Below, piece after piece: positions 21,236 through 64,000 of a stretch of 64,000 nt of DNA. A program made the position numbers and the translations under genes. This DNA comes from Octopus vulgaris (taxonomy: Eukaryota). The notes beneath the pieces were generated by a model that saw only the letters and a program-made list of their open reading frames with translations, ran no database searches and was not told the origin of the DNA. The stretch spans positions 71,548,001 through 71,612,000 of the forward strand of contig OX597814.1 of NCBI GenBank assembly GCA_951406725.2, written 5' to 3'. Numbering within the stretch: the stretch's first letter is position 1; every line of letters starts with the position of its first letter.

Positions 21236-22806
21236 ATTACATGGAAAAATGTGAGCAAGAGAAATAATATTCTTAAGATTATAAACCTGGAAAATTACAG
21301 CATAAGTTATTACATTTGGAAAAGATCAGGACAGCTTCTCAAACGTGGCAGGCACTTCCTTTTACACCAGCTTTCTATTTTCTTCCAGTACTGTCTCAAC
21401 AATGGTGCTACTCCGGAGCAGTGGAAAACTGCCAGTGTCATTCCTCTGTTCAAAAAGGGTGACCGCACATCACCTGTCAACTATCGCCCAGTCAGTCTCA
21501 CTAGCTGTATTGCAAAACTGATGGAATCGTGTGTCAGAGAAACACTCTGGAACTTCTGGAGCTCTCACAGTCTCATCCGACCCTCACAATATGGATTTGT
21601 CCCTAACTCCAGCTGCAGTGACCAGCTTGTCGAGTTCCTTGAGGACATTACTCAGATCACTGACAGTGGCTCATGGGTGGATGTTGTCTACCTTGACTTT
21701 GCTAAGGCTTTCAACTCTGTGCCACACAAAAGGCTTATGGTGAAACTCTCTGCAATGGGTGTGGGGGATGACCTTTTTAACTGGTTGAAATCCTTCATCC
21801 TCAGCCGAAAGGAGGTAGTCACAGTTCTAGGACAGCACTCTACACCATATGAGATGTCATCGGGTGTACCACAGGGATCTGTCCTTGGTCCCCTCCTGTT
21901 TGTGGCATACATTAATGACATAGATGCCAATTTAAAGAATGCCACAGTATTGAAATATGCAGACGACATCAAGCTGTACCTTGAAATCAAGAGGACTGAT
22001 CCTGATGTCTACAACTCTTTCCTGCAATCAGACCTAGACACAATGCAGCAATGGATCACAGACTGGCAACTGAAACTGGCTGTGGACAAGTGTAACACCA
22101 TGCATTTTGGGAGAAAAAACCCTGCGTCCACATACTCCCTCCACAACACTGATATCAAGAAATCCTCTTGCGAGCGTGACCTAGGCATCACTGTCAGCAG
22201 TGATTTGCGTTGGACAAAGCATATCTCTAAAATTGTCAAGAAGGCCGAGGGTGTCTTGGCATCACTCAGCAAGACTTTTGTTAGCCGCTCTCCAGCCATC
22301 TATTTAAAACTGTATACAGCTATGGTACGACCACACTTGGAATTCGCATCATCAGTTTGGAATCCCTATCTTGCTCAGAACATTGACCTCCTGGAGACGT
22401 GCAACCAAACGCATACCCTCCATCAGACACCTACCATATTCTGAGCGCCTTGTTTCCCTGGGCATGGATTCACTGAAGCTCCGGCGTCTAGCGACGGACT
22501 TGGTAAACACCCACAAGGTTATCAACCACCTCACCAACAACAACACTGAACACCTTTTTGATCTCCATGTGTCTAACACATGTGGACATGCCTACAAAGT
22601 CAGAAAACAGCACAGCTCCCATGACTTTCGGAAACATTTTTTCACGCTCAGGGTTGCTGAAGCGTGGAATAAACTGCCTGCATCAGTTGTTGACTGCCAT
22701 GACACTGCATCCTTTAAGGCCCTCATGCTTCCCGAAATCCGTCGAAACTACACCTGATTATATATACACTTTAGATGAGTTGTAGTGCACCTGAGCACTG
22801 TACACA

Positions 22807-35200: not shown

Positions 35201-37500
35201 ATAAAGTAGTGGTGATCCCAAAATGAAGGTGCTTGTGCGTGTGTATGTGAGAGCATGTATGTGCCTGTGGAAGGGGGCTGGGGACATTGACGTGTGCATT
35301 TGTAAGTGTGTGGATAATGGTGTAGGTGCTGGGAAGTGGTTAGTGCTAGTGTGTGCGGGGTGGTGTGATGTGCTGTGGTGGTGGGTTGGAATGTGTAGGA
35401 GTAGGGTAATAAGGGGGGGGTGATGATGAAGGGAGAGGGTGGAAGGGAGAAGGTGGGTAGAAGTGAAGAGAGGAAGTAGATATACTAGTGTAAATTTAAT
35501 TTTTTTTTTTATTAGAGAAATATTGGCCAAATTTCACCAATAAAAATTATATTGCGCAATGAATATAATTTTGTAGACTATTAAAATCAGGTGTGATGTT
35601 TGTATTTTTCCCTGATTTTAAATACAGTCAGTAGCATGTACATATTTGTTTTTGTTTTTTCTCTCCTCTCTCTCTTACTTAATGAATTTGCTGTAAGTTA
35701 CAGATGTTTTAAATGTCTTTAATTTATGCTTTTTAATGCTTAAAGCAAGGAATTAATTTTCACATATTGTTTGTTTTTTAATCTAGGTGTACATGCAATT
35801 CTGAGAAAAGTACCAGGTGGTCGTGGGACGGGCTAGTAACAAGAGTTAGATCTCCCTTAAATAACACACCTTTTCATTTGAAAATATTTTCAAAAATTTT
35901 TTATTCATTTTTAACCAAAAAGGGTTCTCCCATAATTTTTAAGTGTGTACTGTGAAAGAAAAAAAAAATTGGCCAAAATTGGTCCAGAGGGAAGTGGGTG
36001 GGAGAAAATCACAAATTTTCAAAAAAATTTTTCATGAAAAGATTACTCCCATTATTTTCAAGATCATGAGCCAAAGTAAAATTTTAAAAAGTAAGAAAAA
36101 GTCCCAGTCAAAACGGAGAAAATTCAACATATTCTGATCTGAAACTGCCATTTTTAATATTCCATTAAATTTTTATTGCATTTATGTCATACCCCAAAAT
36201 CTCAGGTGTTATTTAGTTCTATACCTACAACAAATAAGCAAAATTGACTGTGACATGTAACAAAATAGACTCTATATAAATATTTTAAAAATTACCAAAA
36301 TAAAGTTTTCAAGAACCTGAAAAAAAAAGGCAACCACTATCCCATGGTCACTATTAGTTTATGTAATTTGAAGATGATTATCACCTCAGTTTCAAAGATA
36401 TGACATCACAAACATGGCTAATTATTCATTTAAACCAATCAGGTATGATTTCCACCAATTCACTGACCATTCAAATTGTCATATTTCTTCAAATATTCAC
36501 CCAAATTTCACAAATGAGATATCAAAATGTTTTTCTTTTAATGCTCTCCAAGAAAAGATACAGTAAAGATTACTTTTAAACATTTTCAAAAATTCATACT
36601 GATACCTACTCCAAGCTCATTAACGTTAAGTTCAGTACTCTACAAAACAACAACTGTGAACACGATTTAATCACCTTCCACTCTGTTCAATCTACTTTTT
36701 AAATGATAATGGCAATTGCTTATAGGATTTTTCTTTAATATTCTTCAACCAGATTTCACACTTCTCAGCAATGTCCTCCACACATTTTGAATAACTGAAT
36801 AACAACTAGAGTTATACTGATTAGGGAACACTTAATTAGATCAATCACAAGACATAGTAGGGGGGTAAAAAAAAACAACTTCCATTCACTGCTTAAATAT
36901 TAAAGTTCTGTATCACAAGTAAATGCAGTTCTTGCCAAATTTTCAACTGAAATTCAAATAGTTTGGCAGTAGAGATAAAAAAAACAGGAACTAAGCACTC
37001 TTCTGTGTGAAAAACATGTTTAACCTCTTCTTAGAAAGAATTTCCTGTATACACAATGTCATTTTTTTTTTTTGGCAATTTATCTGTAAATTTCTTCAGA
37101 TTTGTTTTCCTTCACTGTTTTAAGCACCATGGCAAGTAATACCACAGTGATTTAAAATATAGAGAAATTATTTATTTATGATTTAACTTGAGAAACAGAG
37201 CTTAGATTTGAGGAAATAATGAAATGATATTCTATCTGTATACACTAGTGTAGAGTTTATATTAGGAAGTAGAATGGAGTGGAATGACCACATCATTTAA
37301 TGTTGCATTAATGCTTTTGCTAATGAATGGCAAAGATTAAAAGGAACCATTAATTTACTGATATATTTTAAATGTAGTATTTTTAAGGTTGTTTCAACAG
37401 ATATTCTATACAAACTATAGCCAGCAATGATTTTTGCTACAACATTTTGTATTGAGAAATCAGATGTAAACAAGCAATGCGATTGGAGACAAAAGTGGGT

Positions 37501-37554
37501 AATGAATGTATATGCCATATTTCTGGGGTTGTTGCCCCTTCATCAGCACCCATC
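37501..37554 (-). ncRNA. Type-I hammerhead-ribozyme-like motif (left arm)
   Basis: GAUGGGUG CUGAUGA A GGGG-CAACAA-CCCC A GAA A UAUG-G-CAUA U A / CAUUCAUU. Stem I pairs (with G.U), the core is intact, helix III is near-palindromic and the predicted site is AUA; there is an A.A opposition at the base of stem II. Confidence 0.55.
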
Positions 37555-37812
37555 TAACCCCCTTCTGTCTCCAAACACATTGCTTATATAGCCACTGCAT
37601 ACAGTGGTGTTAAGTTATTGGCTGTACCAATTTACATATTACACACATTCCTGGAACTGGTAGGCTTGTAGGTACGTTGCACTTTGTTATGCAAACACAC
37701 TATACTATGAAATATACAAAATGTTTTTATAAGTCAGTACCACGTCCAATAACTTAACACTGCTGTATGTGGTGGCTATATAAGCAGTGTGTTCGGAGAC
37801 AGAAGTGGGTTA

Positions 37813-37866
37813 GATGGGTGCTGATGAAGGAGCAACAACCCCCAAAATATGGCATATACACTCATT
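37813..37866 (+). ncRNA. Degenerate hammerhead-like motif (right arm)
   Basis: GAUGGGUG CUGAUGA AGGAGCAACAACCCCC AAAA UAUGGCAUAUA CACUCAUU; G12 is lost and stem II is weakened, so probably inactive. Confidence 0.4.
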
Positions 37867-38859
37867 ACCCACTTTTGTCTCTAATCTCATTGCTTATTTA
37901 CATCTGACGTCTCGATATGAAATGTTGTAGCAAAAGTCAGAGCTAGCTATAATTTTTATAGAATATCTGTAGAAACAACCTTAAAAATAATTTAACAAGC
38001 ACTGCTGATGCATATCTTGGAATACTTTTTCTAATGAGGGTTGTGTAGTTTGCTGCTCACAGAAACCATTGGGGTATAAATTCAGCCCTCAGACAAGAAA
38101 TTGATTGTATTTTCTAAATATGTGTGAAAACACTGATATGTAATTAACTTATTTGTATTTAACCTACTTGAGAAGTGAGAGTGATATGACAACAGATAAA
38201 AATTAGCAACAACAAGTAAAATGACAATTTCAACGAAGACCAATTTATATCCTATCACTAAATTTCATCCAAATTCATGCAAAAGTTGGATTTTTATGGT
38301 TTTAATACAAAAGTAACTACTTTTCATCAAAATCTGTAGTTTCTAACAGGATTGGGAATGCACTTGAGAAATTAAAGAGTTAATTCAAAATTATTTTCCT
38401 GCAATAGATATATATTGAAGAATAAGAAATAAGATTAAAACAGACTTAATTTTGTTAGTCTTTAATTCACTGAAATGCTAAAAATAATTTGAATATATTT
38501 GACTTATTTGACATCTGTTGTTTGCAAACACAAAGTGCTGACTGCTTTCATTTTAACTCACCACAAAAACAGAAACCTCCAGAATCAATTTATTCATATC
38601 AAATAAAATGCTACATTTCACTCAGAACTGAATAAAATTGTATGCAATTAACAAAAATTGACTCTATGTGTATATACAATAACCTGATAAATTTCCAATA
38701 GATTTGATGCTAAATAATTGAATTTTTGAAATGTTATGCATTTTACCAAAGTAAGCAATTAAATCAAGCTGTATTTTCAGGTGTGTGTGTGTGCATGCAT
38801 ACACACAAAGCTTATATATATATATATATCTGTAAATGTGACAACTATTCAGTAGCCAT

Positions 38860-38920
38860 GATAAAACTCCGAGTTTCAGATGTCGGGGTGGAAATCCAAG
38901 CCGCCATCTCTTCAGTTATC
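38860..38920 (-). ncRNA. Type-I hammerhead-ribozyme-like motif in the PLE pseudo-LTR
   Basis: GAUAA CUGAAGA GAUG-GCGGCUUGGAUUUCCACCCCGA-CAUC U GAA A CUC-G-GAG U U / UUAUC. Stem I is 5 bp, stem II closes G10.1-C11.1 and is extended, helix III is near-palindromic and the site is GUU; one extra U lies before G12. Confidence 0.65.
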
Positions 38921-39884: not shown

Positions 39885-40209
39885 TCAGTTCTTGAATTCA
39901 GGCATGTAGCAGGGGTCTAAGCTGCTTTTCCAGATGAGCCATCTTTCCATATCACAAAAACCGCACTTTCCACTGCCATTGGTGTAGGGCTTACAGTTGG
40001 TTAAGATCTTCAAATGGATGTTGTAACTGACACCTTTATCTTTTAAGGACCACATATGACTGGATAATTTGGTCGTTTTCCTTTTATCCCAGGGCCTGAA
40101 GCTCAAGGTGTGATTATTGAACCTGGCCTTGAAATTTACCCTCTGTAAGGCCCACGTATGTATTCATTGAAACCGTGTCTTTAGTGGATATAGAGTCCAC
40201 AGTGCTTCA
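39885..40209 (-). pseudogene. Penelope-like GIY-YIG endonuclease fragment
   Basis: NTYVGLTEGKF/KARFNNHTLSFRPWDKRKTTKLSSHMWSLKDKGVSYNIHLKILTNCKPYTNGSGKCGFCDMERWLI matches the PLE GIY-YIG pattern (YIGxTExxFKxRxxNHxxSF..T.LS.HIW.LK..CxLCxxE). Confidence 0.8.
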
Positions 40210-41943: not shown

Positions 41944-42043
41944 NNNNNNNNNNNNNNNNNNNNNNNNNNNNNNNNNNNNNNNNNNNNNNNNNNNNNNNNN
42001 NNNNNNNNNNNNNNNNNNNNNNNNNNNNNNNNNNNNNNNNNNN
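41944..42043. other. Assembly gap (100 N); further 100-N gaps at 48753-48852, 55806-55905, 58165-58264 and 61053-61152
   Basis: Runs of N in the sequence. Confidence 1.
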
Positions 42044-48605
<6,562 letters not shown>

Positions 48606-48606
<1 letters not shown>

Positions 48607-48660
48607 TTATTATCTTGTACTTGTTTCAGTCATTGGACTGAGGCCATACTGAGCACTACC
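48606..48660 (-). mobile_element. SINE 3' tail fragment
   Basis: CTTGTTTCAGTCATTGGACTGAGGCCATACTGAGCAC is the reverse complement of the SINE tail seen at 890-930. Confidence 0.7.
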
Positions 48661-48852
48661 CTGAAGAATTTTTATTCGAGTGAAGGGATGGGGCCTCGAA
48701 ACAAAAAGTTGCAGGGAGCCTCTAGTACTTATTTTTTTTTTAAAAGATTGATNNNNNNNNNNNNNNNNNNNNNNNNNNNNNNNNNNNNNNNNNNNNNNNN
48801 NNNNNNNNNNNNNNNNNNNNNNNNNNNNNNNNNNNNNNNNNNNNNNNNNNNN

Positions 48853-51800
48853 CAAAACAACATTTCTATCTTCAGCTCAGAAACTCCTTGGTTTGGATTT
48901 GGAAACACTGAAAGTAAGAACATACCCTTTCGAAGATCCGCTCGTAACTAACAGTGCCAACAAACCCAAAATAAGCAAGTGAAGAATTTCTGTTCTCCCC
49001 TTTCCACCAGCGTGGGTTAAAATCATCAAACGCTATGCTTATTTCGGTAAAATCCGAAGCATTAATTAGAGGGAGATTAATTATAATTTCAACAATTGAG
49101 GGTAAAATTAATTAATTATTAATCAATTTCACCAAGTGTTCAGTATGCAAAGGGACCATTTAAGGCGAATTCAAATTATTACATTATATAAAAGGGCTTA
49201 GTAAAATAAATTACTTCGCCGCATACTGAACTCATTAGAAATAGCAGCTAAAAAACTTTTTTAAAGCTATTTCTAATACTTAAAGAAAATCTCTCTCATA
49301 TATAGTGTTTGCTTAATTCAACTCACAAAAGTTTGGGGGTAAGGACATCAAAAAATCAAATGCTAAGGTTATTTGAGTACGTACGTTTCAAGATTAGTCA
49401 AAACAACATTTCTATCTTCAGCTCAGAAACTCCTTGGTTTGGATTTGGAAACACTGAAAGTAAGAACATACCCTTTCGAAGATCCGCTCGTAACTAACAG
49501 TGCCAACAAACCCAAAATAAGCAAGTGAAGAATTTCTGTTCTCCCCTTTCCACCAGCGTGGGTTAAAATCATCAAACGCTATGCTTATTTCGGTAAAATC
49601 CGAAGCATTAATTAGAGGGAGATTAATTATAATTTCAACAATTGAGGGTAAAATTAATTAATTATTAATCAATTTCACCAAGTGTTCAGTATGCAAAGGG
49701 ACCATTTAAGGCGAATTCAAATTATTACATTATATAAAAGGGCTTAGTAAAATAAATTACTTCGCCGCATACTGAACTCATTAGAAATAGCAGCTAAAAA
49801 ACTTTTTTAAAGCTATTTCTAATACTTAAAGAAAATCTCTCTCATATATAGTGTTTGCTTAATTCAACTCACAAAAGTTTGGGGGTAAGGACATCAAAAA
49901 ATCAAATGCTAAGGTTATTTGAGTACGTACGTTTCAAGATTAGTCAAAACAACATTTCTATCTTCAGCTCAGAAACTCCTTGGTTTGGATTTGGAAACAC
50001 TGAAAGTAAGAACATACCCTTTCGAAGATCCGCTCGTAACTAACAGTGCCAACAAACCCAAAATAAGCAAGTGAAGAATTTCTGTTCTCCCCTTTCCACC
50101 AGCGTGGGTTAAAATCATCAAACGCTATGCTTATTTCGGTAAAATCCGAAGCATTAATTAGAGGGAGATTAATTATAATTTCAACAATTGAGGGTAAAAT
50201 TAATTAATTATTAATCAATTTCACCAAGTGTTCAGTATGCAAAGGGACCATTTAAGGCGAATTCAAATTATTACATTATATAAAAGGGCTTAGTAAAATA
50301 AATTACTTCGCCGCATACTGAACTCATTAGAAATAGCAGCTAAAAAACTTTTTTAAAGCTATTTCTAATACTTAAAGAAAATCTCTCTCATATATAGTGT
50401 TTGCTTAATTCAACTCACAAAAGTTTGGGGGTAAGGACATCAAAAAATCAAATGCTAAGGTTATTTGAGTACGTACGTTTCAAGATTAGTCAAAACAACA
50501 TTTCTATCTTCAGCTCAGAAACTCCTTGGTTTGGATTTGGAAACACTGAAAGTAAGAACATACCCTTTCGAAGATCCGCTCGTAACTAACAGTGCCAACA
50601 AACCCAAAATAAGCAAGTGAAGAATTTCTGTTCTCCCCTTTCCACCAGCGTGGGTTAAAATCATCAAACGCTATGCTTATTTCGGTAAAATCCGAAGCAT
50701 TAATTAGAGGGAGATTAATTATAATTTCAACAATTGAGGGTAAAATTAATTAATTATTAATCAATTTCACCAAGTGTTCAGTATGCAAAGGGACCATTTA
50801 AGGCGAATTCAAATTATTACATTATATAAAAGGGCTTAGTAAAATAAATTACTTCGCCGCATACTGAACTCATTAGAAATAGCAGCTAAAAAACTTTTTT
50901 AAAGCTATTTCTAATACTTAAAGAAAATCTCTCTCATATATAGTGTTTGCTTAATTCAACTCACAAAAGTTTGGGGGTAAGGACATCAAAAAATCAAATG
51001 CTAAGGTTATTTGAGTACGTACGTTTCAAGATTAGTCAAAACAACATTTCTATCTTCAGCTCAGAAACTCCTTGGTTTGGATTTGGAAACACTGAAAGTA
51101 AGAACATACCCTTTCGAAGATCCGCTCGTAACTAACAGTGCCAACAAACCCAAAATAAGCAAGTGAAGAATTTCTGTTCTCCCCTTTCCACCAGCGTGGG
51201 TTAAAATCATCAAACGCTATGCTTATTTCGGTAAAATCCGAAGCATTAATTAGAGGGAGATTAATTATAATTTCAACAATTGAGGGTAAAATTAATTAAT
51301 TATTAATCAATTTCACCAAGTGTTCAGTATGCAAAGGGACCATTTAAGGCGAATTCAAATTATTACATTATATAAAAGGGCTTAGTAAAATAAATTACTT
51401 CGCCGCATACTGAACTCATTAGAAATAGCAGCTAAAAAACTTTTTTAAAGCTATTTCTAATACTTAAAGAAAATCTCTCTCATATATAGTGTTTGCTTAA
51501 TTCAACTCACAAAAGTTTGGGGGTAAGGACATCAAAAAATCAAATGCTAAGGTTATTTGAGTACGTACGTTTCAAGATTAGTCAAAACAACATTTCTATC
51601 TTCAGCTCAGAAACTCCTTGGTTTGGATTTGGAAACACTGAAAGTAAGAACATACCCTTTCGAAGATCCGCTCGTAACTAACAGTGCCAACAAACCCAAA
51701 ATAAGCAAGTGAAGAATTTCTGTTCTCCCCTTTCCACCAGCGTGGGTTAAAATCATCAAACGCTATGCTTATTTCGGTAAAATCCGAAGCATTAATTAGA

Positions 51801-54800
51801 GGGAGATTAATTATAATTTCAACAATTGAGGGTAAAATTAATTAATTATTAATCAATTTCACCAAGTGTTCAGTATGCAAAGGGACCATTTAAGGCGAAT
51901 TCAAATTATTACATTATATAAAAGGGCTTAGTAAAATAAATTACTTCGCCGCATACTGAACTCATTAGAAATAGCAGCTAAAAAACTTTTTTAAAGCTAT
52001 TTCTAATACTTAAAGAAAATCTCTCTCATATATAGTGTTTGCTTAATTCAACTCACAAAAGTTTGGGGGTAAGGACATCAAAAAATCAAATGCTAAGGTT
52101 ATTTGAGTACGTACGTTTCAAGATTAGTCAAAACAACATTTCTATCTTCAGCTCAGAAACTCCTTGGTTTGGATTTGGAAACACTGAAAGTAAGAACATA
52201 CCCTTTCGAAGATCCGCTCGTAACTAACAGTGCCAACAAACCCAAAATAAGCAAGTGAAGAATTTCTGTTCTCCCCTTTCCACCAGCGTGGGTTAAAATC
52301 ATCAAACGCTATGCTTATTTCGGTAAAATCCGAAGCATTAATTAGAGGGAGATTAATTATAATTTCAACAATTGAGGGTAAAATTAATTAATTATTAATC
52401 AATTTCACCAAGTGTTCAGTATGCAAAGGGACCATTTAAGGCGAATTCAAATTATTACATTATATAAAAGGGCTTAGTAAAATAAATTACTTCGCCGCAT
52501 ACTGAACTCATTAGAAATAGCAGCTAAAAAACTTTTTTAAAGCTATTTCTAATACTTAAAGAAAATCTCTCTCATATATAGTGTTTGCTTAATTCAACTC
52601 ACAAAAGTTTGGGGGTAAGGACATCAAAAAATCAAATGCTAAGGTTATTTGAGTACGTACGTTTCAAGATTAGTCAAAACAACATTTCTATCTTCAGCTC
52701 AGAAACTCCTTGGTTTGGATTTGGAAACACTGAAAGTAAGAACATACCCTTTCGAAGATCCGCTCGTAACTAACAGTGCCAACAAACCCAAAATAAGCAA
52801 GTGAAGAATTTCTGTTCTCCCCTTTCCACCAGCGTGGGTTAAAATCATCAAACGCTATGCTTATTTCGGTAAAATCCGAAGCATTAATTAGAGGGAGATT
52901 AATTATAATTTCAACAATTGAGGGTAAAATTAATTAATTATTAATCAATTTCACCAAGTGTTCAGTATGCAAAGGGACCATTTAAGGCGAATTCAAATTA
53001 TTACATTATATAAAAGGGCTTAGTAAAATAAATTACTTCGCCGCATACTGAACTCATTAGAAATAGCAGCTAAAAAACTTTTTTAAAGCTATTTCTAATA
53101 CTTAAAGAAAATCTCTCTCATATATAGTGTTTGCTTAATTCAACTCACAAAAGTTTGGGGGTAAGGACATCAAAAAATCAAATGCTAAGGTTATTTGAGT
53201 ACGTACGTTTCAAGATTAGTCAAAACAACATTTCTATCTTCAGCTCAGAAACTCCTTGGTTTGGATTTGGAAACACTGAAAGTAAGAACATACCCTTTCG
53301 AAGATCCGCTCGTAACTAACAGTGCCAACAAACCCAAAATAAGCAAGTGAAGAATTTCTGTTCTCCCCTTTCCACCAGCGTGGGTTAAAATCATCAAACG
53401 CTATGCTTATTTCGGTAAAATCCGAAGCATTAATTAGAGGGAGATTAATTATAATTTCAACAATTGAGGGTAAAATTAATTAATTATTAATCAATTTCAC
53501 CAAGTGTTCAGTATGCAAAGGGACCATTTAAGGCGAATTCAAATTATTACATTATATAAAAGGGCTTAGTAAAATAAATTACTTCGCCGCATACTGAACT
53601 CATTAGAAATAGCAGCTAAAAAACTTTTTTAAAGCTATTTCTAATACTTAAAGAAAATCTCTCTCATATATAGTGTTTGCTTAATTCAACTCACAAAAGT
53701 TTGGGGGTAAGGACATCAAAAAATCAAATGCTAAGGTTATTTGAGTACGTACGTTTCAAGATTAGTCAAAACAACATTTCTATCTTCAGCTCAGAAACTC
53801 CTTGGTTTGGATTTGGAAACACTGAAAGTAAGAACATACCCTTTCGAAGATCCGCTCGTAACTAACAGTGCCAACAAACCCAAAATAAGCAAGTGAAGAA
53901 TTTCTGTTCTCCCCTTTCCACCAGCGTGGGTTAAAATCATCAAACGCTATGCTTATTTCGGTAAAATCCGAAGCATTAATTAGAGGGAGATTAATTATAA
54001 TTTCAACAATTGAGGGTAAAATTAATTAATTATTAATCAATTTCACCAAGTGTTCAGTATGCAAAGGGACCATTTAAGGCGAATTCAAATTATTACATTA
54101 TATAAAAGGGCTTAGTAAAATAAATTACTTCGCCGCATACTGAACTCATTAGAAATAGCAGCTAAAAAACTTTTTTAAAGCTATTTCTAATACTTAAAGA
54201 AAATCTCTCTCATATATAGTGTTTGCTTAATTCAACTCACAAAAGTTTGGGGGTAAGGACATCAAAAAATCAAATGCTAAGGTTATTTGAGTACGTACGT
54301 TTCAAGATTAGTCAAAACAACATTTCTATCTTCAGCTCAGAAACTCCTTGGTTTGGATTTGGAAACACTGAAAGTAAGAACATACCCTTTCGAAGATCCG
54401 CTCGTAACTAACAGTGCCAACAAACCCAAAATAAGCAAGTGAAGAATTTCTGTTCTCCCCTTTCCACCAGCGTGGGTTAAAATCATCAAACGCTATGCTT
54501 ATTTCGGTAAAATCCGAAGCATTAATTAGAGGGAGATTAATTATAATTTCAACAATTGAGGGTAAAATTAATTAATTATTAATCAATTTCACCAAGTGTT
54601 CAGTATGCAAAGGGACCATTTAAGGCGAATTCAAATTATTACATTATATAAAAGGGCTTAGTAAAATAAATTACTTCGCCGCATACTGAACTCATTAGAA
54701 ATAGCAGCTAAAAAACTTTTTTAAAGCTATTTCTAATACTTAAAGAAAATCTCTCTCATATATAGTGTTTGCTTAATTCAACTCACAAAAGTTTGGGGGT

Positions 54801-55805
54801 AAGGACATCAAAAAATCAAATGCTAAGGTTATTTGAGTACGTACGTTTCAAGATTAGTCAAAACAACATTTCTATCTTCAGCTCAGAAACTCCTTGGTTT
54901 GGATTTGGAAACACTGAAAGTAAGAACATACCCTTTCGAAGATCCGCTCGTAACTAACAGTGCCAACAAACCCAAAATAAGCAAGTGAAGAATTTCTGTT
55001 CTCCCCTTTCCACCAGCGTGGGTTAAAATCATCAAACGCTATGCTTATTTCGGTAAAATCCGAAGCATTAATTAGAGGGAGATTAATTATAATTTCAACA
55101 ATTGAGGGTAAAATTAATTAATTATTAATCAATTTCACCAAGTGTTCAGTATGCAAAGGGACCATTTAAGGCGAATTCAAATTATTACATTATATAAAAG
55201 GGCTTAGTAAAATAAATTACTTCGCCGCATACTGAACTCATTAGAAATAGCAGCTAAAAAACTTTTTTAAAGCTATTTCTAATACTTAAAGAAAATCTCT
55301 CTCATATATAGTGTTTGCTTAATTCAACTCACAAAAGTTTGGGGGTAAGGACATCAAAAAATCAAATGCTAAGGTTATTTGAGTACGTACGTTTCAAGAT
55401 TAGTCAAAACAACATTTCTATCTTCAGCTCAGAAACTCCTTGGTTTGGATTTGGAAACACTGAAAGTAAGAACATACCCTTTCGAAGATCCGCTCGTAAC
55501 TAACAGTGCCAACAAACCCAAAATAAGCAAGTGAAGAATTTCTGTTCTCCCCTTTCCACCAGCGTGGGTTAAAATCATCAAACGCTATGCTTATTTCGGT
55601 AAAATCCGAAGCATTAATTAGAGGGAGATTAATTATAATTTCAACAATTGAGGGTAAAATTAATTAATTATTAATCAATTTCACCAAGTGTTCAGTATGC
55701 AAAGGGACCATTTAAGGCGAATTCAAATTATTACATTATATAAAAGGGCTTAGTAAAATAAATTACTTCGCCGCATACTGAACTCATTAGAAATAGCAGC
55801 TAAAA
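48853..55805. repeat. Tandem array of a 546-bp monomer, ~12.7 copies, no differences noticed between copies; candidate retrozyme or ribozyme-bearing satellite
   Basis: The ORF track repeats an identical 62-aa frame every 546 bp (49309...55315); 6953 bp / 546 = 12.7; N gaps on both sides. Confidence 0.97.
49374..49425 (-). ncRNA. Type-I hammerhead-ribozyme-like motif, first of 12 complete copies (add 546 for each next copy; last starts at 55380)
   Basis: Minus strand UGAG CUGAAGA UAGAAAUGUUGUUUUGACUAAUCUU GAAA C GUAC G UA / CUCA. Core CUGANGA and GAAA present; helix III is A-U plus C-G closed by palindromic GUAC; GUA cleavage triplet; stem I UGAG/CUCA. Stem II is imperfect (U.U base, AGA/UCU, 3x3 internal loop, GUU/GAC). 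Confidence 0.6.
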
Positions 55806-55908
55806 NNNNNNNNNNNNNNNNNNNNNNNNNNNNNNNNNNNNNNNNNNNNNNNNNNNNNNNNNNNNNNNNNNNNNNNNNNNNNNNNNNNNNNNNNNNNNNN
55901 NNNNNAAT

Positions 55909-56187
<279 letters not shown>

Positions 56188-56191
<4 letters not shown>

Positions 56192-57400: not shown

Positions 57401-57515
<115 letters not shown>

Positions 57516-57821: not shown

Positions 57822-58264
57822 ATATATGTATGGATGCATGTATATATGTAAAATGCATGTATCTCTTACAAAGTAGCTAATTTTTTTATCATACTGTGCT
57901 TTCCTACTTTCTTTAAGTGGGTAGGAATTATATTTATATTGAGTCAAAATCCACTTGTTTTGCCCTTCATTTTCTACTATTTCTATCTCGTTTTCGTCTT
58001 CGCGTTTTCATTCTCTCTTCTTTTCTCATTGTTCTTCTGATTTCACCTTCTATTCACTTCTCTACATCTCTCTCACGCTCTTCTCCCCCTCTCACTGCCT
58101 TCTTTCCTTCTTTTTCTTCTTGTCCTCCTCCTTCTTTTGCTTCATTTTCTCTTTCTGCTGTCTTNNNNNNNNNNNNNNNNNNNNNNNNNNNNNNNNNNNN
58201 NNNNNNNNNNNNNNNNNNNNNNNNNNNNNNNNNNNNNNNNNNNNNNNNNNNNNNNNNNNNNNNN

Positions 58265-60684
58265 GGTGTTTATATGAGTGGCCCAGCTTACGTTGTTGTC
58301 CACAATTACTCCCAAGTCTCTGATGTTGTTGGACGCCGCGAGAGTTTCACCTGAAGGAAGGGAGTATGGGAGTTTCAGGGCATCCTCTTTTCCAAAGTGG
58401 ATTAGCTCAAATTTATCCTCGTTCAGCAGCATATTGTTTTTTTCCGCCCATTGGATAACAGCCAGTAGATCTGACTGAAGGCATGTCCGGTCACTCGCCT
58501 CATTTATGACCTTCTGTAGCTTGGAGTCATCTGCAAAGATTTTTATGTTGCTGTGCTTGATGATGTCATTAATGTCATTAATGTAAATGATGAAAAGAAG
58601 TGGGTCCAGCACAGTGCCTTGCGGAACGCCACTACTGACTTTGGCTGGGCTTGATTTTACCCCTTCAACTACAACATGTTGAGATCTGTCTGTCAGGAAA
58701 CACTTAATCCATTTCAGTAACTTTCCAGAGACACCAATGTTGGATAGTTTTTTCAATAGGATCTTGTGATCGACCCTGTCGAAGGCCTTACTGAAATCAA
58801 GGTAGATGACATCGGTGTTGGAGCCCTCTCCCAAAGCTCTCAAAATGTCCTCAAAGTGATGCAGGAGCTGCGTTAGGCAGTCCCTTCCATTACGGAACCC
58901 ATGTTGGTTGGAGATCAGCCGTCTGTTGCTTTCCAGAAATTGGGTTATTTGAGATCTCACCACCCTCTCAAATACCTTGATGATATGAGACGTGAGTGAG
59001 ATCGGACGGTAATTCACTGCAAGGGACTTGTTTCCCTTTTTGAAAACTGGGACAACAGACTGGGACAGAAGGTTTTTTGGAATATAGCCAGCATCCAGTG
59101 AGTTTCTCCACAGATTAGCAAGGGGAGATGCAAGTTGGTGTCGACACACCTTCAGGACACAAGCAGGGAACCTGTCGGGGCCTACTGCTGAATTGTGTTT
59201 TATTTCGTTTATCGCCGCTAAAACATCAGGGGCACTAAACGTTATGTCCGATATAGTGTGTTGGGGGTTGACATCACTGATACAGCCCAGATCGGCCATA
59301 TCAGGATTGCTGAAAACAGAGCAGTATTGTTTCTGCAGTATCTCGGCCATGGATTTGGCATTATCTTGGAGAGTGCCAGTTTCGTCAATTAGAGGGCCTA
59401 CAGTGGAGACAGTGACCCTGCGTTTCCTCGCAAATGAAAAGAACACTTTGGGGTTGAGTTTGATTTTTTCAATGGCCCACTTCTCCTCAGCTGATCTTTG
59501 GTTATTGATGAGGGTCTTCATGCATTGTTGGAGGTTATATTTTTTGGATTCAAGCAGTGCGATAGCCGTCGAATGTGTGTGTTGCTGTTGGCAGTACTTT
59601 AGTTTGTTAATTTTTTTGTTTGTTCTTTTTATTTTTCTGATAATGTTTTTCTGTTTTGGGGGATTCTGCACTTTTTGTTCACAGGTCTTGGTGGGGAGTG
59701 TTTTGCACATATGTCTGTGACGGTGTCTACAAAGATCTGCCAAGATGTTTTATGGTTGGTGGAGATGTGTGTATGTGTAAAGGACCAGTCAACATTTGAT
59801 AGCTCGTTCCTGATTGCATTCCAGTTGGCTTTATGGAGATCCATGTTGTCAAATGGGTGGGCTGGAGGAAGGTCACTAGGATTAGCTTTCGGCTGGTGGA
59901 ATTTCATGTTACAGAGAACCATGTCATGGTCTGAAAGAAGGGTTTTTTCCACTGTAACGTTATGTATAGTGTTAGTGTGGTTACTAAACACTAGGTCCAA
60001 AATGTTCTGATGTCTTGTTGGTGCAAGGACAAGTTGGGACAAGAAAAACTCATTCGTAAAGTCGAAAAGTGACTCTGCTGCTTCTTTGTCAGCGGTTGAG
60101 GCGGGAGTGCTTGGTTTCAAACAGTTTGTAGTCCAGTCAACACAGGGTAGATTGAAGTCTCCCATCATGAGTATGTTGCTAGAATGGCACTGTTGAATAA
60201 AGCACTTAATGCTGTTGAGGCATTCTTTAAAGCACAGTATGGGTGTTTGGGGCGGCCTATAGAGCCCAATTACTGTCAGGTCATTGGCTTTGTTGTGCAC
60301 GGTGACTGATTCACAGTAGCCATTGGAGAATATACTATTTCCATCTGCCGTAAATGAATCATGCAGGAAAATGGCAGTTCCACCCTTCCTCCTGCCGATA
60401 CGATCCGCGCGGATGGTTGTGAAATTCTTCACTCTCACTTCGGCTTCCAAGTGGGAGTTGTCAAGGTGGGTCTCAGTGAGAATGAAGAAAGGGATGTGGT
60501 GTGAATGGTTACCAACCCAGTCTTCAATGAATTGGACCTTCCATTTTTGTGCATTGATGGAAGGGCTGACACCTTGTGCATTGAGTAGGAATGTGGAGGT
60601 TAGTGTAGTGGCTGGTTTTGACTGTTGCAGGGGGCTTGGATTTTTTGTGTGTGTTAGTGGCAGCAATGTGGGGAATTGGTGCAC
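58265..60684 (-). pseudogene. CR1-group ORF2 (APE endonuclease + RT) with one frameshift near 59640
   Basis: EN: LNAQG, LTETHL, GGTAIF, GLYRPP, MGDFN, NILDLVF, LSDHDMV. RT: [62 protein letters not shown]. Confidence 0.9.
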
Positions 60685-61052: not shown

Positions 61053-61152
61053 NNNNNNNNNNNNNNNNNNNNNNNNNNNNNNNNNNNNNNNNNNNNNNNN
61101 NNNNNNNNNNNNNNNNNNNNNNNNNNNNNNNNNNNNNNNNNNNNNNNNNNNN

Positions 61153-61295: not shown

Positions 61296-64000
61296 AGGGG
61301 AGTTTCGATCAAAAGGGATCGTAAAAGGAGAGAAAGAGGACAAAAAAAAGGGGGGTTAAAAAAAAGGGGAGAGGAAAAAAAAATTGATCAATAGGGATCG
61401 TTATCACAGAAATGTCAATATGAAGTGTAAAGGGGAGGACAGGTGAGGTTTACCCGTGGAAAGAAAAGCCTACGGAAAAGACCACGGTAACCTCGGTCAA
61501 TGAAGTCACATTTTATATTTCTTTTTTTTTTTTTTTTGCAAATAAGCAACTCTCTGTTTTCGATTTCTGGGTTCATAGGACTATGCTCAAGGTGGCTTCG
61601 TCATTCATACGTGCCATTCTTGCTACATTCACCCATCTTTTTTTAAAACATTCGCTAGACAAAACTTGCCTCTCTACTCTCACTTTCCTTTTCAAGTGGT
61701 ACTTGAAGAAGTTGATGAGAGATTGACCAGAGAGGAAAGTGTTTGTCTCCAATCCTTTCAGACGCGTCCACCAGATACATTCTTTCGCCATAGCCACAAG
61801 GATGATGAAAATAGCTCTTCCTTCCCGTTTGAAGGAAGGAGGCGTGACAATATTGACGATAGACCCAGCTGATAAACCGACTCGTCCCACACGTGACAGC
61901 AGTTGTTCGACATAAGCCCACAGGTCGGAAATTGTTGGACACTGAACGAGTGCGTGCAGAACGGTTTCGTCGCTCTGACCGCATCTCGGGCAGGTCGGCC
62001 CCGTGTTTCTCGAGCCGTGTCTGTAGAGCTTATCCCGAACGGGTAGCGCTTCTCGGTAGCACTGCCAGGCCAGGGATCTCTGGAAGTTGTCCATGGGCCC
62101 TGGCCCGAAAGTCGTCCTGAACAGGCGGGTCAGGTACTCCTCGTCGACGTCCAGGTTCGCCCCGAGCTCGTCGTCGTACCTCCCCTCCACTAAACCCCTA
62201 TAGAATGCTTTGGTTGTGTTGAAGTCACTTAAGGTCGACCCAGGACGGCAGAGTTGCTTGAGAGCAACGCGACACTCGCGGTGCCATTCGCCCTTCCTCG
62301 GCCTCTTTTTGATCCACGACTGCAGTTCGGTCATGGAGACGAGCTGCGGGAAAGCGTGCCTCACAAACGGCGACCACACCTGTTCACCGTCGTCTACATA
62401 GAGCCAGAGATGCCGCAGTCTCAGCGCGTGTCTGCGCATCATCAACCACGGCATGCCCAGCCCTCCGTTTAACGGGTGTTGACAGCAAATGGATCGCCTG
62501 ACCATCGGGACGCATCCTTTCCACAAGAAGCGAAAGAGGATGCGTTGTAGTTTGGTGATGGTAGGGTCGGGACAAGGTACGACGGTCAGGCGGTAGTAGA
62601 TGACGGACGCGATGTACGTGTTCGCCACCTCCGCTCGACCTTTTAGGGACAGTTTCCTCTCGGCCCATTGCCGGGCGAGAGTGACCACCCTACTCGTTAT
62701 CTCGTTCCAGTTCTTCTCCACTTGGAGGTCCGGACCAAACCAGACCCCGAGCAACTCAACCGGGCCGTCGGTCCAGCGTCCCACGACGGAGGCGCTGGTG
62801 GACGGCATGGGCTTGCTTCTCCAGGTGCCTAGTCGCAAGCCCACTGACTTTTCCCGGTTGATTTTCGCTCCTGTCACCGCTTCGTAGTTTTTCAGTGTCT
62901 CGCCGACCAGCTCGATGTGCTCGTGGCTAGACACTATGACGGTGACGTCGTCCGCGTATGCAGACACGCTCGTCCCGTATCCCAATTCTCGCGGGATGCC
63001 CCTTAGAGTCGCCAGCTTCCGCAGTAGTGGCTCAAGAGTCAATACGTATAGAAGCGCCGAGAGGGGGCATCCCTGACGGACCGAACGTGCAATGTCGAAA
63101 GGTCTCGATAGATGTCCATTTACGCGAATTACCGAACGGATGCCTCTGTACAAGGCAGCTATCCATCCGCGGAAAACGGGACCGAAACCAGCCGCTCTCA
63201 GGACTGCCCCCAAGTATCGATGGTCCACCCTATCAAAGGCTTTCGATTGATCCAAGTTGATCAGGGCCCCACCCATGCCAGGTTCGTTAACTACCCTGTC
63301 TATGATGTAGCGCATCAGATGGAGGTTGTCATGGATGGTCCGGCCTGGCACGGCGCATGTTTGCGCCTTGTCGACCAGTTTCTCGATGACAAGCGCCAAC
63401 CTCTTGGCTAGCACCTTGGCCAAAATTTTCAAGTCTGCATTAAGCAGAGTGATGGGCCTAAAGTTATCTATTACATTTCCCTTGTTTAGATCTTTCTTCA
63501 GCAGTGTTACGGCTCCTCGGCTCACAAAACCAGGAATGCTCCCGTTTTGCTGCCAGTTGCAGTACACCGCCGCCAAGAGATCTCCAAACAAGTCTGGCAT
63601 ACAATTGTAAAGCTCGTAGGGTAGACCATCCAAACCCGGTGATTTGTCCCTCGAGCATTCTGCCATCGCTTCCCGCACTTCCGCCGCCGTGATGGCACCT
63701 TCGCAGCACCCTGCCTTTCTTGTCGAGAGTCGTGGTAGGCTATGTAGGTAGGCACTGAAGTCCACCCTACGTTCTTGCCCTCCACTCGTTCCGAACAGTC
63801 GGGCAAAATGCTGCTGAAAGGCTTCACACATTTTACTTGGCTCGAGCAATTCGCGCCCCTGTTCATCTACCAGTGACCGAATGGTGGCTTTGTTGCCCTG
63901 TTGCGCCTCTGCCACCCGGGCCTCTCTCGCGGCTCCAACACCTTCGTTCCTTAGAGCACGCATCCTAGCTCTGACAGCACATCCTTCGTGTTTGGCGTTG
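61189..64000 (-). mobile_element. Young Tx1/L1-clade LINE, 3' half (continues beyond the window)
   Basis: Intact ORF2, a ~380-bp 3' UTR with U-tracts, and AATAAAGAAACATA directly followed by (TCTA)n. Confidence 0.93.
61573..64000 (-). CDS. Tx1 ORF2 (RT and C-terminal zinc finger), open frame, partial at the window edge
   Basis: At least 796 aa without a stop: KSPGLDGLPYE, NFRPITLLNADLKILAKVLAKRL, LDQSKAFDRVDH, RQGCPLSALLY, SAYADDVT, CPRCGQSDETVLHALVQC. Clear homology to the decayed ORF2 at 3090-6396. Confidence 0.93.
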   Translation of the reverse strand, partial: NAKHEGCAVRARMRALRNEGVGAAREARVAEAQQGNKATIRSLVDEQGRELLEPSKMCEAFQQHFARLFGTSGGQERRVDFSAYLHSLPRLSTRKAGCCEGAITAAEVREAMAECSRDKSPGLDGLPYELYNCMPDLFGDLLAAVYCNWQQNGSIPGFVSRGAVTLLKKDLNKGNVIDNFRPITLLNADLKILAKVLAKRLALVIEKLVDKAQTCAVPGRTIHDNLHLMRYIIDRVVNEPGMGGALINLDQSKAFDRVDHRYLGAVLRAAGFGPVFRGWIAALYRGIRSVIRVNGHLSRPFDIARSVRQGCPLSALLYVLTLEPLLRKLATLRGIPRELGYGTSVSAYADDVTVIVSSHEHIELVGETLKNYEAVTGAKINREKSVGLRLGTWRSKPMPSTSASVVGRWTDGPVELLGVWFGPDLQVEKNWNEITSRVVTLARQWAERKLSLKGRAEVANTYIASVIYYRLTVVPCPDPTITKLQRILFRFLWKGCVPMVRRSICCQHPLNGGLGMPWLMMRRHALRLRHLWLYVDDGEQVWSPFVRHAFPQLVSMTELQSWIKKRPRKGEWHRECRVALKQLCRPGSTLSDFNTTKAFYRGLVEGRYDDELGANLDVDEEYLTRLFRTTFGPGPMDNFQRSLAWQCYREALPVRDKLYRHGSRNTGPTCPRCGQSDETVLHALVQCPTISDLWAYVEQLLSRVGRVGLSAGSIVNIVTPPSFKREGRAIFIILVAMAKECIWWTRLKGLETNTFLSGQSLINFFKYHLKRKVRVERQVLSSECFKKRWVNVARMARMNDEATLSIVL

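What the first reader, a model, noticed from the sequence alone, without database searches (positions are those of the whole stretch)
48853..55805. 546-bp tandem array with one hammerhead-ribozyme-like motif per monomer: candidate cephalopod non-LTR retrozyme or self-cleaving satellite
Seen: about 12.7 head-to-tail 546-bp monomers. The minus strand of each reads UGAG-CUGAAGA-[25 nt]-GAAA-C-GUAC-GUA/CUCA (49425 to 49374, then every 546 bp; 12 complete copies). The catalytic-core consensus (CUGANGA, GAAA, NUH), a pairing stem I and a very short helix III closed by a palindromic tetranucleotide occur in the right order. Established: minimal type-I hammerheads with palindromic helix III are typical of Penelope-like elements and are reported to cleave as dimers. 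Tandem monomers with one hammerhead each define newt satellite 2, Schistosoma Sm-alpha, Dolichopoda pDo500 and metazoan non-LTR retrozymes, which give monomeric linear and circular RNAs. Inference: minus-strand read-through transcription would be processed into 546-nt monomers or circles cut between 49378 and 49377, possibly mobilised by the PLE machinery whose remnants lie 9-11 kb away. I know of no description of this monomer, but cannot search. Caveat: stem II is weak, begins with U.U, and an alternative AAGAU/AUCUU pairing could sequester the core.
Basis: partly seen in the sequence, partly recalled or inferred. Interest (0 to 1): 0.9.

Follow-up and report, generated by a model that had tools for sequence, protein, structure and literature searches.

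The report
Tandem repeat with doubtful hammerhead ribozyme
A 546-bp DNA unit repeated 12.7 times carries one sequence per unit that looks like a self-cutting hammerhead RNA, rarer than chance predicts but with one of its three helices too weak to trust, so it is a plausible and unproven cephalopod example of a known kind of mobile RNA circle.

Summary
Window 48853-55805 holds 12.73 head-to-tail copies of a 546-bp unit. The minus strand of each full unit reads UGAG-CUGAAGA-N25-GAAA-CGUACG-UA/CUCA.

- All copies are 100% identical, so the 12 motifs are one independent observation.
- The array is exactly one contig between two 100-N scaffold gaps. Its neighbourhood, copy number and lack of variation are therefore assembly-dependent.

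For a hammerhead:
- The catalytic core is complete, helix I has 4 bp, and the ACGUACGU helix III is fully palindromic.
- A motif this good arose in 7 of 160,000 shuffled monomers.
- The monomer RNA is unusually self-paired (z -5.5 to -6.6).

Against:
- Helix II is a U.U mismatch, 3 AU-rich pairs and an internal loop (-0.5 kcal/mol).
- The hammerhead-compatible fold is +0.3 kcal/mol, 2e-5 of the ensemble. A 7-bp hairpin that buries GAAA is preferred.

Untestable or uninformative:
- No homologue was found anywhere, so conservation could not be tested.
- Rfam finds nothing, but it also misses better hammerhead-like motifs at 37.5 kb.

Verdict: partly supported. I give about 0.45 to a retrozyme-like, hammerhead-derived repeat (active only as a dimer, or decayed) and about 0.4 to an ordinary satellite with a chance motif. 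If real, it is a new member of a known kind.

The parts
48853..55805 (.). Tandem array: 12.73 copies of a 546-bp unit, all 100% identical. It is one whole contig.
48753..48852 (.). 100-N scaffold gap directly left of the array.
55806..55905 (.). 100-N scaffold gap directly right of the array.
49378..49923 (-). Representative monomer in the phase of the putative cleavage site. The RNA would start CUCAAAU... at 49923 and end ...GAAACGUACGUA at 49378. MFE is -146.6 kcal/mol and 64% of bases are paired when folded as a circle.
49374..49425 (-). Hammerhead-like motif, first of 12 identical copies spaced 546 bp apart (the last is 55380-55431). Helix I is UGAG/CUCA. The core is CUGAAGA ... GAAA. Helix III is A-U and C-G closed by GUAC. 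The cleavage triplet is GUA, with the cut between 49378 and 49377.
49389..49413 (-). The 25-nt helix II region UAGAAAUGUUGUUUUGACUAAUCUU: a U.U mismatch, then A-U/G-C/A-U, a 3x3 internal loop, and G-C/U-A/U.G. Stability is -0.5 kcal/mol at 37 C. Its GUUUUGA segment pairs instead with UUGAAAC (core G12-A15.1 plus C15.2) in the minimum-energy fold.
49780..49823 (.). 44-nt near-perfect palindrome inside the monomer, the strongest of several inverted repeats. Others are 49684-49694/49767-49777, 49621-49670 and 49512-49523/49582-49593.
48853..48879 (-). Truncated 13th motif at the contig edge. Helix I 5' strand, CUGAAGA and part of helix II are present. GAAA and helix III are lost in the gap.
   Evidence: first 60 bases of the array.

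Best explanation
This is a non-coding, AT-rich 546-bp tandem repeat of the hammerhead-bearing kind: metazoan non-LTR retrozymes, newt/axolotl satellite 2, and Penelope-like-element (PLE) derived repeats.

Inferred mechanism:
1. Read-through transcription of the minus strand yields multimeric RNA.
2. A single motif cannot fold productively.
3. Neighbouring motifs pair through the self-complementary ACGUACGU to give an 8-bp helix III (a double hammerhead).
4. The RNA is cut after GUA, between 49378 and 49377 and every 546 nt.
5. This releases 546-nt, highly self-paired monomers with 5'-OH and 2',3'-cyclic phosphate ends.
6. A host RtcB-type ligase could circularise the monomers, and a PLE or other reverse transcriptase could copy them back as tandem DNA.

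The ribozyme is atypical. Helix II is marginal, so activity is expected to be low, dimer-dependent, or already lost (a relic).

Shown here: the array, the motif anatomy, its rarity by chance, and the self-complementarity of the monomer. Inferred: transcription, cleavage, circles and mobilisation.

Of the 0.45 confidence, roughly 0.25-0.3 is for an active ribozyme and the rest for a decayed one.
For: - All 11 conserved core positions, the A15.1-U16.1 pair and H17=A are present in the correct order on one strand. It is the only CUGANGA box in the monomer.
- A motif with helix I of at least 4 bp, a palindromic helix III and helix II of at least 3 bp arose in 7 of 160,000 shuffles. The loosest version arose in 0.25%.
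- The same descriptor gave 0 hits in a reversed decoy. In the other 57 kb it gave only 2 hits, both in a hammerhead-like repeat region at 37.5-38.9 kb.
- A short helix III with a palindromic loop is a named hallmark of metazoan type-I hammerheads that act as dimers (PMC4209133).
- A U.U mismatch at the base of helix II occurs in the active axolotl HHR_Amex2 (PMC7229834).
- Minus-strand monomer RNA has z = -6.6 and -5.5, beyond all 44 background 546-nt segments of the window (mean -0.75, minimum -4.76).
- GC 32.8%, no ORF longer than 79 codons, no protein homologues, and a size within 51-972 bp.
Against: - Helix II lacks G10.1-C11.1 and has only 3 AU-rich pairs before a 3x3 internal loop (-0.5 kcal/mol). 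18% of chance hits do as well.
- The best hammerhead-compatible fold is +0.3 kcal/mol, 2e-5 of the ensemble. Two hammerhead-like motifs elsewhere in the window reach -9.2 and -12.0 kcal/mol.
- The minimum-energy fold (-5.5 kcal/mol) buries G12-A15.1 in a GUUUUGA/UUGAAAC hairpin. The AAGAU/AUCUU register buries A6-A9.
- The motif region folds no better than its shuffles (z +0.4 to +0.8).
- Helix I is only 4 bp, and loop1-loop2 contacts were not looked for.
- No Rfam hammerhead hit appears even at E<=10 in 141 nt.
- An unbiased count of wobble pairs gives no significant preference for the minus strand (9 vs 5), so the self-complementarity could be a DNA-level property.
- There is no variation among copies and no homologue, so there is no evolutionary evidence.
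- The monomer shows no similarity to the putative PLE repeat in the window.
Confidence: 0.45

Rival explanations
1. This is an ordinary satellite DNA whose monomer happens to contain a hammerhead-like string. The CUGAAGA...GAAA...GUA arrangement has no function. The array expands and homogenises by unequal crossing-over or replication slippage, and the internal palindromes are DNA-level features.
For: - Helix II is at chance level and the catalytic fold has no predicted stability.
- The motif region folds no better than its shuffles.
- There is no Rfam hit.
- There is only one independent sequence.
- The descriptor was written after seeing the motif, and the first stage read an unknown number of windows. 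The loose version occurs in 0.25% of shuffles.
- Strand asymmetry of wobble pairs is not significant.
- Hammerhead 'cores' that fit no stem descriptor are reported in Naiad PLEs without any claim of activity (PMC8557442).
Against: - The full observed feature set is rare by chance (7 of 160,000). A decoy gave none, and the only other hits in the window lie in a hammerhead-like repeat.
- The palindromic helix III is exactly the feature expected of dimer-acting hammerheads.
- The motif lies in a tandem repeat with the GC content, size and self-pairing described for retrozymes.
Confidence: 0.4
2. The array as printed is largely a product of assembly. It could be a repeat-only long-read contig polished to a consensus, or a concatemer derived from a small circular DNA, dropped into this scaffold by scaffolding. 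The 546-bp unit exists, but the copy number, the perfect identity and the location are not biological facts.
For: - The array begins and ends exactly at 100-N gaps.
- There are zero mismatches over 6,953 bp.
- The surrounding scaffold is made of 2-7 kb contigs separated by further 100-N gaps at 41944, 58165 and 61053.
- The monomer has no similarity to anything else in the window.
Against: - Head-to-tail order over 12 units needs reads that span units, so a tandem or circular template is real.
- Other repeats in the window are not homogenised. The inverted copies at 37.5 kb differ at 3 of 38 positions.
- This explanation does not bear on whether the motif is a ribozyme.
Confidence: 0.1
3. The working parts of the monomer are its long hairpins, for example as a small-RNA precursor cluster or a protein-binding or fork-stalling DNA structure. 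The hammerhead-like string is incidental.
For: - Both strands fold far better than shuffles (z -4.2 and -5.5 to -6.6).
- A 44-nt near-perfect palindrome and several 11-17-nt inverted repeats are present.
Against: - No Rfam miRNA or other family reaches any meaningful score inside the monomer.
- Nothing points to a specific pathway.
- Self-pairing is equally expected of retrozyme circles.
Confidence: 0.05

Closest known systems
Metazoan non-LTR retrozymes (Cervera & de la Pena 2020, PMC7229834; review PMC7761336; bioRxiv 10.64898/2026.07.22.740005)
   Same: Head-to-tail repeats with one type-I hammerhead per unit. GC is low. There are no ORFs, LTRs or PBS. The monomer RNA is predicted to be highly self-paired. 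Helix III is weak and palindromic. The size lies within the 51-972 bp reported for consensus families.
   Different: Canonical retrozyme hammerheads have about 6 bp in helix I, about 4 bp of stable helix II with G10.1-C11.1, and usually loop1-loop2 contacts. Here helix I has 4 bp and helix II is marginal. At 546 bp the unit is larger than the 150-450 bp typical of invertebrates. Expression and circles are unknown. I found no report from cephalopods in the paper library.
Newt satellite 2 / axolotl HHR_Amex1 and HHR_Amex2 (PMC7229834)
   Same: Like Amex2, helix III has 2 bp capped by a tetraloop and there is a U.U mismatch at the base of helix II. Cleavage is poor as a monomer and efficient as a dimer. 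The genomic organisation is a tandem satellite.
   Different: Monomers are 330-350 bp. The rest of the axolotl helix II and the loop contacts are conserved across about 60,000 copies. Here only one sequence is known, and 3 weak pairs follow the mismatch.
Minimal hammerheads of Penelope-like elements (Cervera & de la Pena 2014, PMC4209133)
   Same: Helix I is short (4-5 bp). Positions 15.2-16.2 and loop 3 are palindromic. The motifs are presumed to act as dimers and show low activity in vitro.
   Different: PLE motifs have a long helix II (6-8 bp), a conserved G10.1-C11.1 pair and an extra nucleotide between A9 and 10.1. They sit in pseudo-LTRs flanking an RT/GIY-YIG ORF. None of these holds for the array motif.
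Dolichopoda pDo500 and Schistosoma Sm-alpha hammerhead satellites (recalled from memory, not checked here)
   Same: Satellite or SINE-like tandem units with one type-I hammerhead each. pDo500 units are about 500 bp.
   Different: Both have demonstrated self-cleavage and stable helices I and II.
'HHR_core' strings in Naiad PLEs (Craig et al. 2021, PMC8557442)
   Same: CUGANGA ... GAAA are present, but the stems do not fit hammerhead descriptors.
   Different: Those strings lack helix III and the cleavage triplet context, which are present here. They lie in retrotransposon UTRs, not in a satellite.

Membership tests
Type-I hammerhead ribozyme | Conserved core: C3 U4 G5 A6 N7 G8 A9, G12 A13 A14, the A15.1-U16.1 pair, and H17 (not G), in this order | tested here: met
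   CUGAAGA ... GAAA-C-GUAC-G-U-A on the minus strand, 12 identical copies.
Type-I hammerhead ribozyme | Helix I flanking the motif (canonical about 6 bp; 4-5 bp in minimal variants) | tested here: inconclusive
   UGAG/CUCA gives 4 Watson-Crick pairs, followed by a C.A mismatch and scattered A-U pairs. This meets the minimal size but not the canonical one.
Type-I hammerhead ribozyme | Stable helix II (at least 4 bp) starting with G10.1-C11.1 | tested here: not met
   U.U, then A-U/G-C/A-U, then a 3x3 internal loop. Stability is -0.5 kcal/mol at 37 C and -3.5 at 15 C. 18% of chance hits do as well. The U.U mismatch alone has a precedent in HHR_Amex2.
Type-I hammerhead ribozyme | Short helix III with a palindromic loop, allowing a double hammerhead | tested here: met
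   ACGUACGU is fully self-complementary. The intermolecular duplex is -11.8 kcal/mol. 11% of chance hits are palindromic.
Type-I hammerhead ribozyme | Loop1-loop2 tertiary contacts | not tested
   Helix I is open with no defined loop 1. Loop 2 is a 17-nt AU-rich stretch. I did not compare these with the published contact nucleotides.
Type-I hammerhead ribozyme | The catalytic fold is thermodynamically accessible | tested here: not met
   The best compatible fold is +0.3 kcal/mol, 2e-5 of the ensemble (3e-4 if only helices I and II are required). Controls in the same window reach -9.2 and -12.0 kcal/mol, 1.5-2.7e-3 of the ensemble. Nearest-neighbour models ignore tertiary and dimer effects.
Type-I hammerhead ribozyme | Match to the Rfam hammerhead covariance models | tested here: inconclusive
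   No hit at gathering score, none at E<=10 in 7.7 kb, and none at E<=10 in 141 nt. The far better hammerhead-like motif at 37.5 kb is also missed, so the test has little power for minimal variants.
Type-I hammerhead ribozyme | Conservation or covariation of the stems among homologues | not testable with these tools
   Copies are identical. No homologue was found through two monomer ORFs or through DNA scans of metagenome, viral and prokaryotic collections. No eukaryotic genome collection was available.
Type-I hammerhead ribozyme | Site-specific self-cleavage | not testable with these tools
   Needs a bench assay.
Metazoan non-LTR retrozyme | Head-to-tail repeats, at least 2 consecutive units each with a complete hammerhead motif | tested here: inconclusive
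   There are 12 consecutive units with the motif. Whether the motif counts as 'complete' depends on helix II. The array is an isolated contig.
Metazoan non-LTR retrozyme | Small non-coding unit of low GC, without LTR, PBS or PPT | tested here: met
   546 bp, GC 32.8%, longest stop-to-stop frame 79 codons, no protein relatives, no tRNA-like element. The published size range is 51-972 bp.
Metazoan non-LTR retrozyme | Monomer RNA predicted to be highly self-paired | tested here: met
   z = -6.6 and -5.5 on the motif strand, beyond all 44 background segments. 64% of bases pair when folded as a circle. The strand preference is not significant.
Metazoan non-LTR retrozyme | Co-occurrence with, and sequence relation to, PLE pseudo-LTRs | tested here: inconclusive
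   Hammerhead-like motifs in an inverted repeat at 37.47-37.90 kb, and one at 38.87-38.92 kb, suggest PLE-type elements in this genome. No Pfam RT or GIY-YIG domain was found nearby. The monomer shows no similarity to that region.
Metazoan non-LTR retrozyme | Expression as linear and circular monomer RNA | not testable with these tools
   No read data were available.
PLE minimal hammerhead | Long helix II (6-8 bp), G10.1-C11.1, an extra nucleotide after A9, and a location in a pseudo-LTR next to an RT/GIY-YIG ORF | tested here: not met
   For helix II see above. The motif sits in a satellite unit with no ORF. The features are listed in PMC4209133.

The most novel reading that the evidence does not exclude
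This is the first retrozyme-type element of a cephalopod. It would be a 546-nt, highly structured RNA monomer or circle released from tandem DNA by an unusually stripped-down hammerhead that has almost no helix II and works only as a double hammerhead held together by an 8-bp palindromic helix III. That would extend the known limits of what a natural hammerhead needs.
Probability: 0.27. Interest if true: 0.55.

Novelty: new member of a known kind. Interest (0 to 1): 0.38.

Why it matters
If the motif cleaves, cephalopods would join the animals that make abundant ribozyme-derived circular RNAs from tandem DNA. This example would also show that a natural hammerhead can work with a nearly absent helix II when dimerisation supplies helix III. 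That is useful for setting ribozyme search descriptors and for designing circular RNAs. If it does not cleave, it is a cautionary case: a complete core, a plausible helix I and a palindromic helix III can occur in a satellite without a functional ribozyme. Pipelines that accept any motif with an unconstrained MFE below -5 kcal/mol would then miscall it, because this motif scores -5.5 kcal/mol in a non-hammerhead fold. Either way the interest is moderate, because hammerhead-bearing tandem repeats are already known from many animal phyla.

Tried and rejected
- Tandem Repeats Finder does not report the array, because the run is limited to periods of 500 or less. A lag comparison and the repeat finder were used instead.
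- Rfam gave no hammerhead or other ribozyme family at gathering score, at E<=10 on the array, or at E<=10 on 141 nt. The listed hits (mir-297 and similar in AT microsatellites, CRISPR-DR50 at E=4 on the 44-nt palindrome, snoU54 at E=0.67) are chance or low-complexity. Control searches showed Rfam also misses the hammerhead-like motifs at 37.5 kb, so I treat this negative as uninformative.
- A coding repeat was considered, because 546 = 3 x 182. I rejected it. Every frame has stops, the longest open frame is 79 codons, and two frames searched against 5.8 billion proteins share no words with anything.
- A tRNA or SINE-like origin: no tRNA-like element was found.
- Derivation from another repeat in the window: no shared 20-mer and no blastn match better than E=0.1.
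- Homologues elsewhere: exact-pattern scans of metagenome contigs (two patterns), viral contigs and prokaryotic genomes found nothing. No eukaryotic genome or read collection was available.
- RNA-level strand preference: the minus strand folds better (z and 23 vs 9 G.U pairs). An unbiased count in DNA-level inverted repeats gives 9 vs 5, which is not significant. I do not use it as evidence.
- PLE protein remnants 9-11 kb away: no Pfam hit in ORFs or stop-to-stop frames of 36.5-41.9 kb.
- Literature: no paper in the library links hammerhead ribozymes or retrozymes to a cephalopod repeat.


Full report
**1. The observation**

The array is real in the sequence.
- A self-comparison at a lag of 546 gives no mismatch from 48853 to 55259, so 48853-55805 is 6,953 bp, or 12.73 copies.
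- Tandem Repeats Finder does not list the array only because the run is limited to periods of 500 or less.
- The string CTGAAGA-N25-GAAACGTACGTA occurs 12 times on the minus strand at exact 546-bp spacing. About 0.01 matches are expected by chance in the window.
- The proposed cut between 49378 and 49377 is the correct hammerhead site (3' of H17).

**2.

All copies are identical. The 12 motifs are therefore one independent sequence, and no conservation or covariation can be read from the array.

The array starts and ends exactly at 100-N runs, 48753-48852 and 55806-55905. It is a whole stand-alone contig placed by scaffolding in a stretch made of 2-7 kb contigs, with further gaps at 41944, 58165 and 61053.
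- Its neighbours, its copy number and probably its perfect homogeneity are properties of the assembly. Consensus polishing of a repeat-only contig would erase copy-to-copy variants. This last point is my inference.
- The unit shares no 20-mer and no meaningful blastn match with the rest of the window.

**3. What the unit is not**

- It is not coding. Although 546 = 3 x 182, every frame has stops and the longest open frame is 79 codons. Two frames searched against 5.8 billion proteins share no words with anything.
- It has no tRNA-like part.
- No Rfam family reaches a meaningful score.

**4. Is the motif more than chance?**

I wrote a type-I descriptor with these requirements:
- helix I of at least 4 bp, G.U allowed;
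- CUGANGA, then 6-60 nt, then GAAA;
- a helix III that includes A15.1-U16.1, with either at least one further pair and a short loop or a fully palindromic insert;
- H17, followed by the 3' strand of helix I.

I ran it on dinucleotide-preserving shuffles of the circular monomer, both strands.

| Requirement | Shuffles with a hit (of 160,000) |
|---|---|
| Loose descriptor | 405 (0.25%) |
| Plus fully palindromic helix III | 44 |
| Plus helix II of at least 3 bp (one unpaired nucleotide allowed each side) | 73 |
| Both (the observed level) | 7 (4e-5) |

A reversed-sequence decoy of the other 57 kb gave no hit. The real 57 kb gave two, both in a hammerhead-like repeat region at 37.5-38.9 kb.

The descriptor was written after seeing the motif, and the first stage read an unknown number of windows. 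Allowing for both, chance is still an uncomfortable explanation for the core, helix I and palindromic helix III. Helix II adds almost nothing, because 18% of chance hits have a helix II at least as good.

**5. Does it fold as a hammerhead?**

Not by nearest-neighbour energetics.
- The 52-nt motif has an MFE of -5.5 kcal/mol in a different fold. GUUUUGA, inside the supposed loop 2, pairs with UUGAAAC and buries G12-A15.1.
It would bury A6-A9.
- The best hammerhead-compatible structure is +0.3 kcal/mol, 2e-5 of the ensemble. It is 3e-4 if only helices I and II are required.
- The motif and its surroundings fold no better than shuffles (z +0.4 to +0.8).
- Helix II alone is -0.5 kcal/mol at 37 C and -3.5 at 15 C.
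- The two hammerhead-like motifs at 37.5 and 38.9 kb have compatible folds of -9.2 and -12.0 kcal/mol.
- In the motif's favour, ACGUACGU is fully self-complementary. Two units can form an 8-bp helix III worth -11.8 kcal/mol. This is the double-hammerhead arrangement described for newt, axolotl and PLE motifs (PMC4209133; PMC7229834).

**6. The monomer as a whole**

- The minus-strand monomer RNA folds to -146.6 kcal/mol, with z = -6.6 (100 shuffles) and -5.5 (20 shuffles). The plus strand gives z = -4.2.
- Forty-four background 546-nt segments of the window have a mean z of -0.75, sd 1.41 and minimum -4.76. The unit is therefore unusually self-complementary.
- It contains a 44-nt near-perfect palindrome and several 11-17-nt inverted repeats.
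- This fits the 'highly self-paired' retrozyme RNAs (PMC7761336).
- It could equally be a DNA-level property. The minus strand has more G.U pairs in its MFE (23 vs 9). An unbiased count of transition mismatches in DNA-level inverted repeats gives 9 vs 5, which is not significant.

**7. Rfam**

No hammerhead model matches, even at E<=10 in a 141-nt search. The same is true for the much better motif at 37.5 kb. I therefore treat this negative as uninformative for minimal variants.

**8. Context and origin**

- The window is rich in LINE-type reverse transcriptase and endonuclease ORFs.
- The ORF at 61573-63960 (minus strand) has its best named relative in Argonauta hians, at 65% identity. Unnamed relatives reach 71-74%. 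A cephalopod origin, probably octopod-related, is plausible.
Each arm carries a hammerhead-like motif, and the plus-strand copy has GAAA changed to AAAA. There is another motif at 38.87-38.92 kb.
- No Pfam RT or GIY-YIG domain is detectable at 36.5-41.9 kb.
- Two scaffold gaps separate that region from the array, so proximity means little.

**9. Comparison with known systems**

Defining features come from PMC4209133, PMC7229834, PMC7761336 and bioRxiv 10.64898/2026.07.22.740005.

The unit matches non-LTR retrozymes in these respects:
- tandem organisation;
- low GC;
- no coding capacity;
- self-pairing;
- size, since 546 bp lies within the 51-972 bp range of consensus families;
- a weak palindromic helix III.

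The U.U mismatch at the base of helix II has a precedent in axolotl HHR_Amex2. That motif cleaved 22% in one hour as a monomer and much better as a dimer.

It fails the canonical and PLE-minimal definitions on helix II. There is no G10.1-C11.1 pair, only 3 weak pairs, and none of the 6-8 bp typical of PLE motifs. Loop-loop contacts were not examined. I therefore do not file it as a confirmed hammerhead or retrozyme. It works like one only on paper.

One published pipeline calls a motif 'active' if its unconstrained MFE is below -5 kcal/mol. This motif would pass at -5.5 kcal/mol, but in a non-hammerhead fold.

**10. Weighing**

For a real, hammerhead-derived element:
- the feature set is rare by chance;
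- the setting is the right kind of repeat;
- the palindrome is the hallmark of dimer-acting hammerheads;
- the RNA is unusually structured.

Against:
- helix II is at chance level;
- competing folds are preferred;
- helix I is short;
- there is no evolutionary evidence.

My estimates:

| Explanation | Confidence |
|---|---|
| Retrozyme-like, hammerhead-derived repeat | about 0.45 (0.25-0.3 still active as a dimer, the rest decayed) |
| Ordinary satellite with a chance motif | about 0.4 |
| Assembly artefact or hairpin-centred function | the remainder |

**11. Novelty and interest**

I found no report linking hammerheads or retrozymes to a cephalopod repeat. If real, this is a new member of a known kind with an atypically weak helix II. 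Hammerhead-bearing tandem repeats are already known from cnidarians to amphibians, including a mollusc, so a specialist would be interested but not surprised. With the unresolved doubt about the ribozyme, I score interest at 0.38.

Noticed in passing
window 37470-37900: A large inverted repeat whose arms each carry a much more convincing type-I hammerhead-like motif. The minus-strand copy (37509-37546) reads CUGAUGA-A-GGGG-CAACAA-CCCC-A-GAAA-UAU-GGC-AUA-U-A with a long helix I. The plus-strand copy (37821-37858) is degenerate, with GAAA changed to AAAA. The best compatible fold is -9.2 kcal/mol. Rfam does not report it. It is probably a Penelope-like pseudo-LTR pair.
   Followed up: partly
window 38865-38915 (minus strand): A second hammerhead-like motif: CUGAAGA, a 4+3 bp helix II (GAUG..CAUC), an extra U before GAAA, a 3-bp helix III and a 5-bp helix I. 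The best compatible fold is -12.0 kcal/mol.
   Followed up: partly
window 39888-40163 (minus strand): A 92-codon open frame (…FKARFNNHTLSFR…KLSSHMWSLKDKG…) that looked to me like the tail of a GIY-YIG endonuclease.
   Followed up: partly
window 41944-42043, 48753-48852, 55806-55905, 58165-58264, 61053-61152: Five runs of exactly 100 N. The 42-64 kb part of the window is a chain of 2-7 kb contigs, so gene order and distances there depend on scaffolding.
   Followed up: yes
window 43000-46060, 47957-48610, 55913-56188, 57401-57514: Very long (AT)n microsatellites (GC 2% over 44-46 kb) and an (ATAG)28 run. These produce long spurious ORFs and spurious miRNA-family hits in Rfam. (TA)n is a reported preferred target of Naiad PLEs (PMC8557442).
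   Followed up: no
window 4603-5319, 12135-13334, 21194-22444, 46127-47950, 58265-60684, 61573-63963: At least six LINE-type reverse-transcriptase ORFs or fragments. One has an APE endonuclease (59629-60684) and one has zf-RVT. There is also a zf-CCHC gag-like ORF at 1889-2539. The window is mostly retrotransposon debris.
   Followed up: partly
protein P0016 (hit of window 61573-63960, minus strand): A protein annotated as coming from a Herbaspirillum sp. MAG is 64% identical to this animal LINE ORF. That record is probably host (cephalopod-like) DNA binned into a bacterial genome. JGI metagenome 3300045642 also holds 72-74% identical LINE fragments.
   Followed up: no
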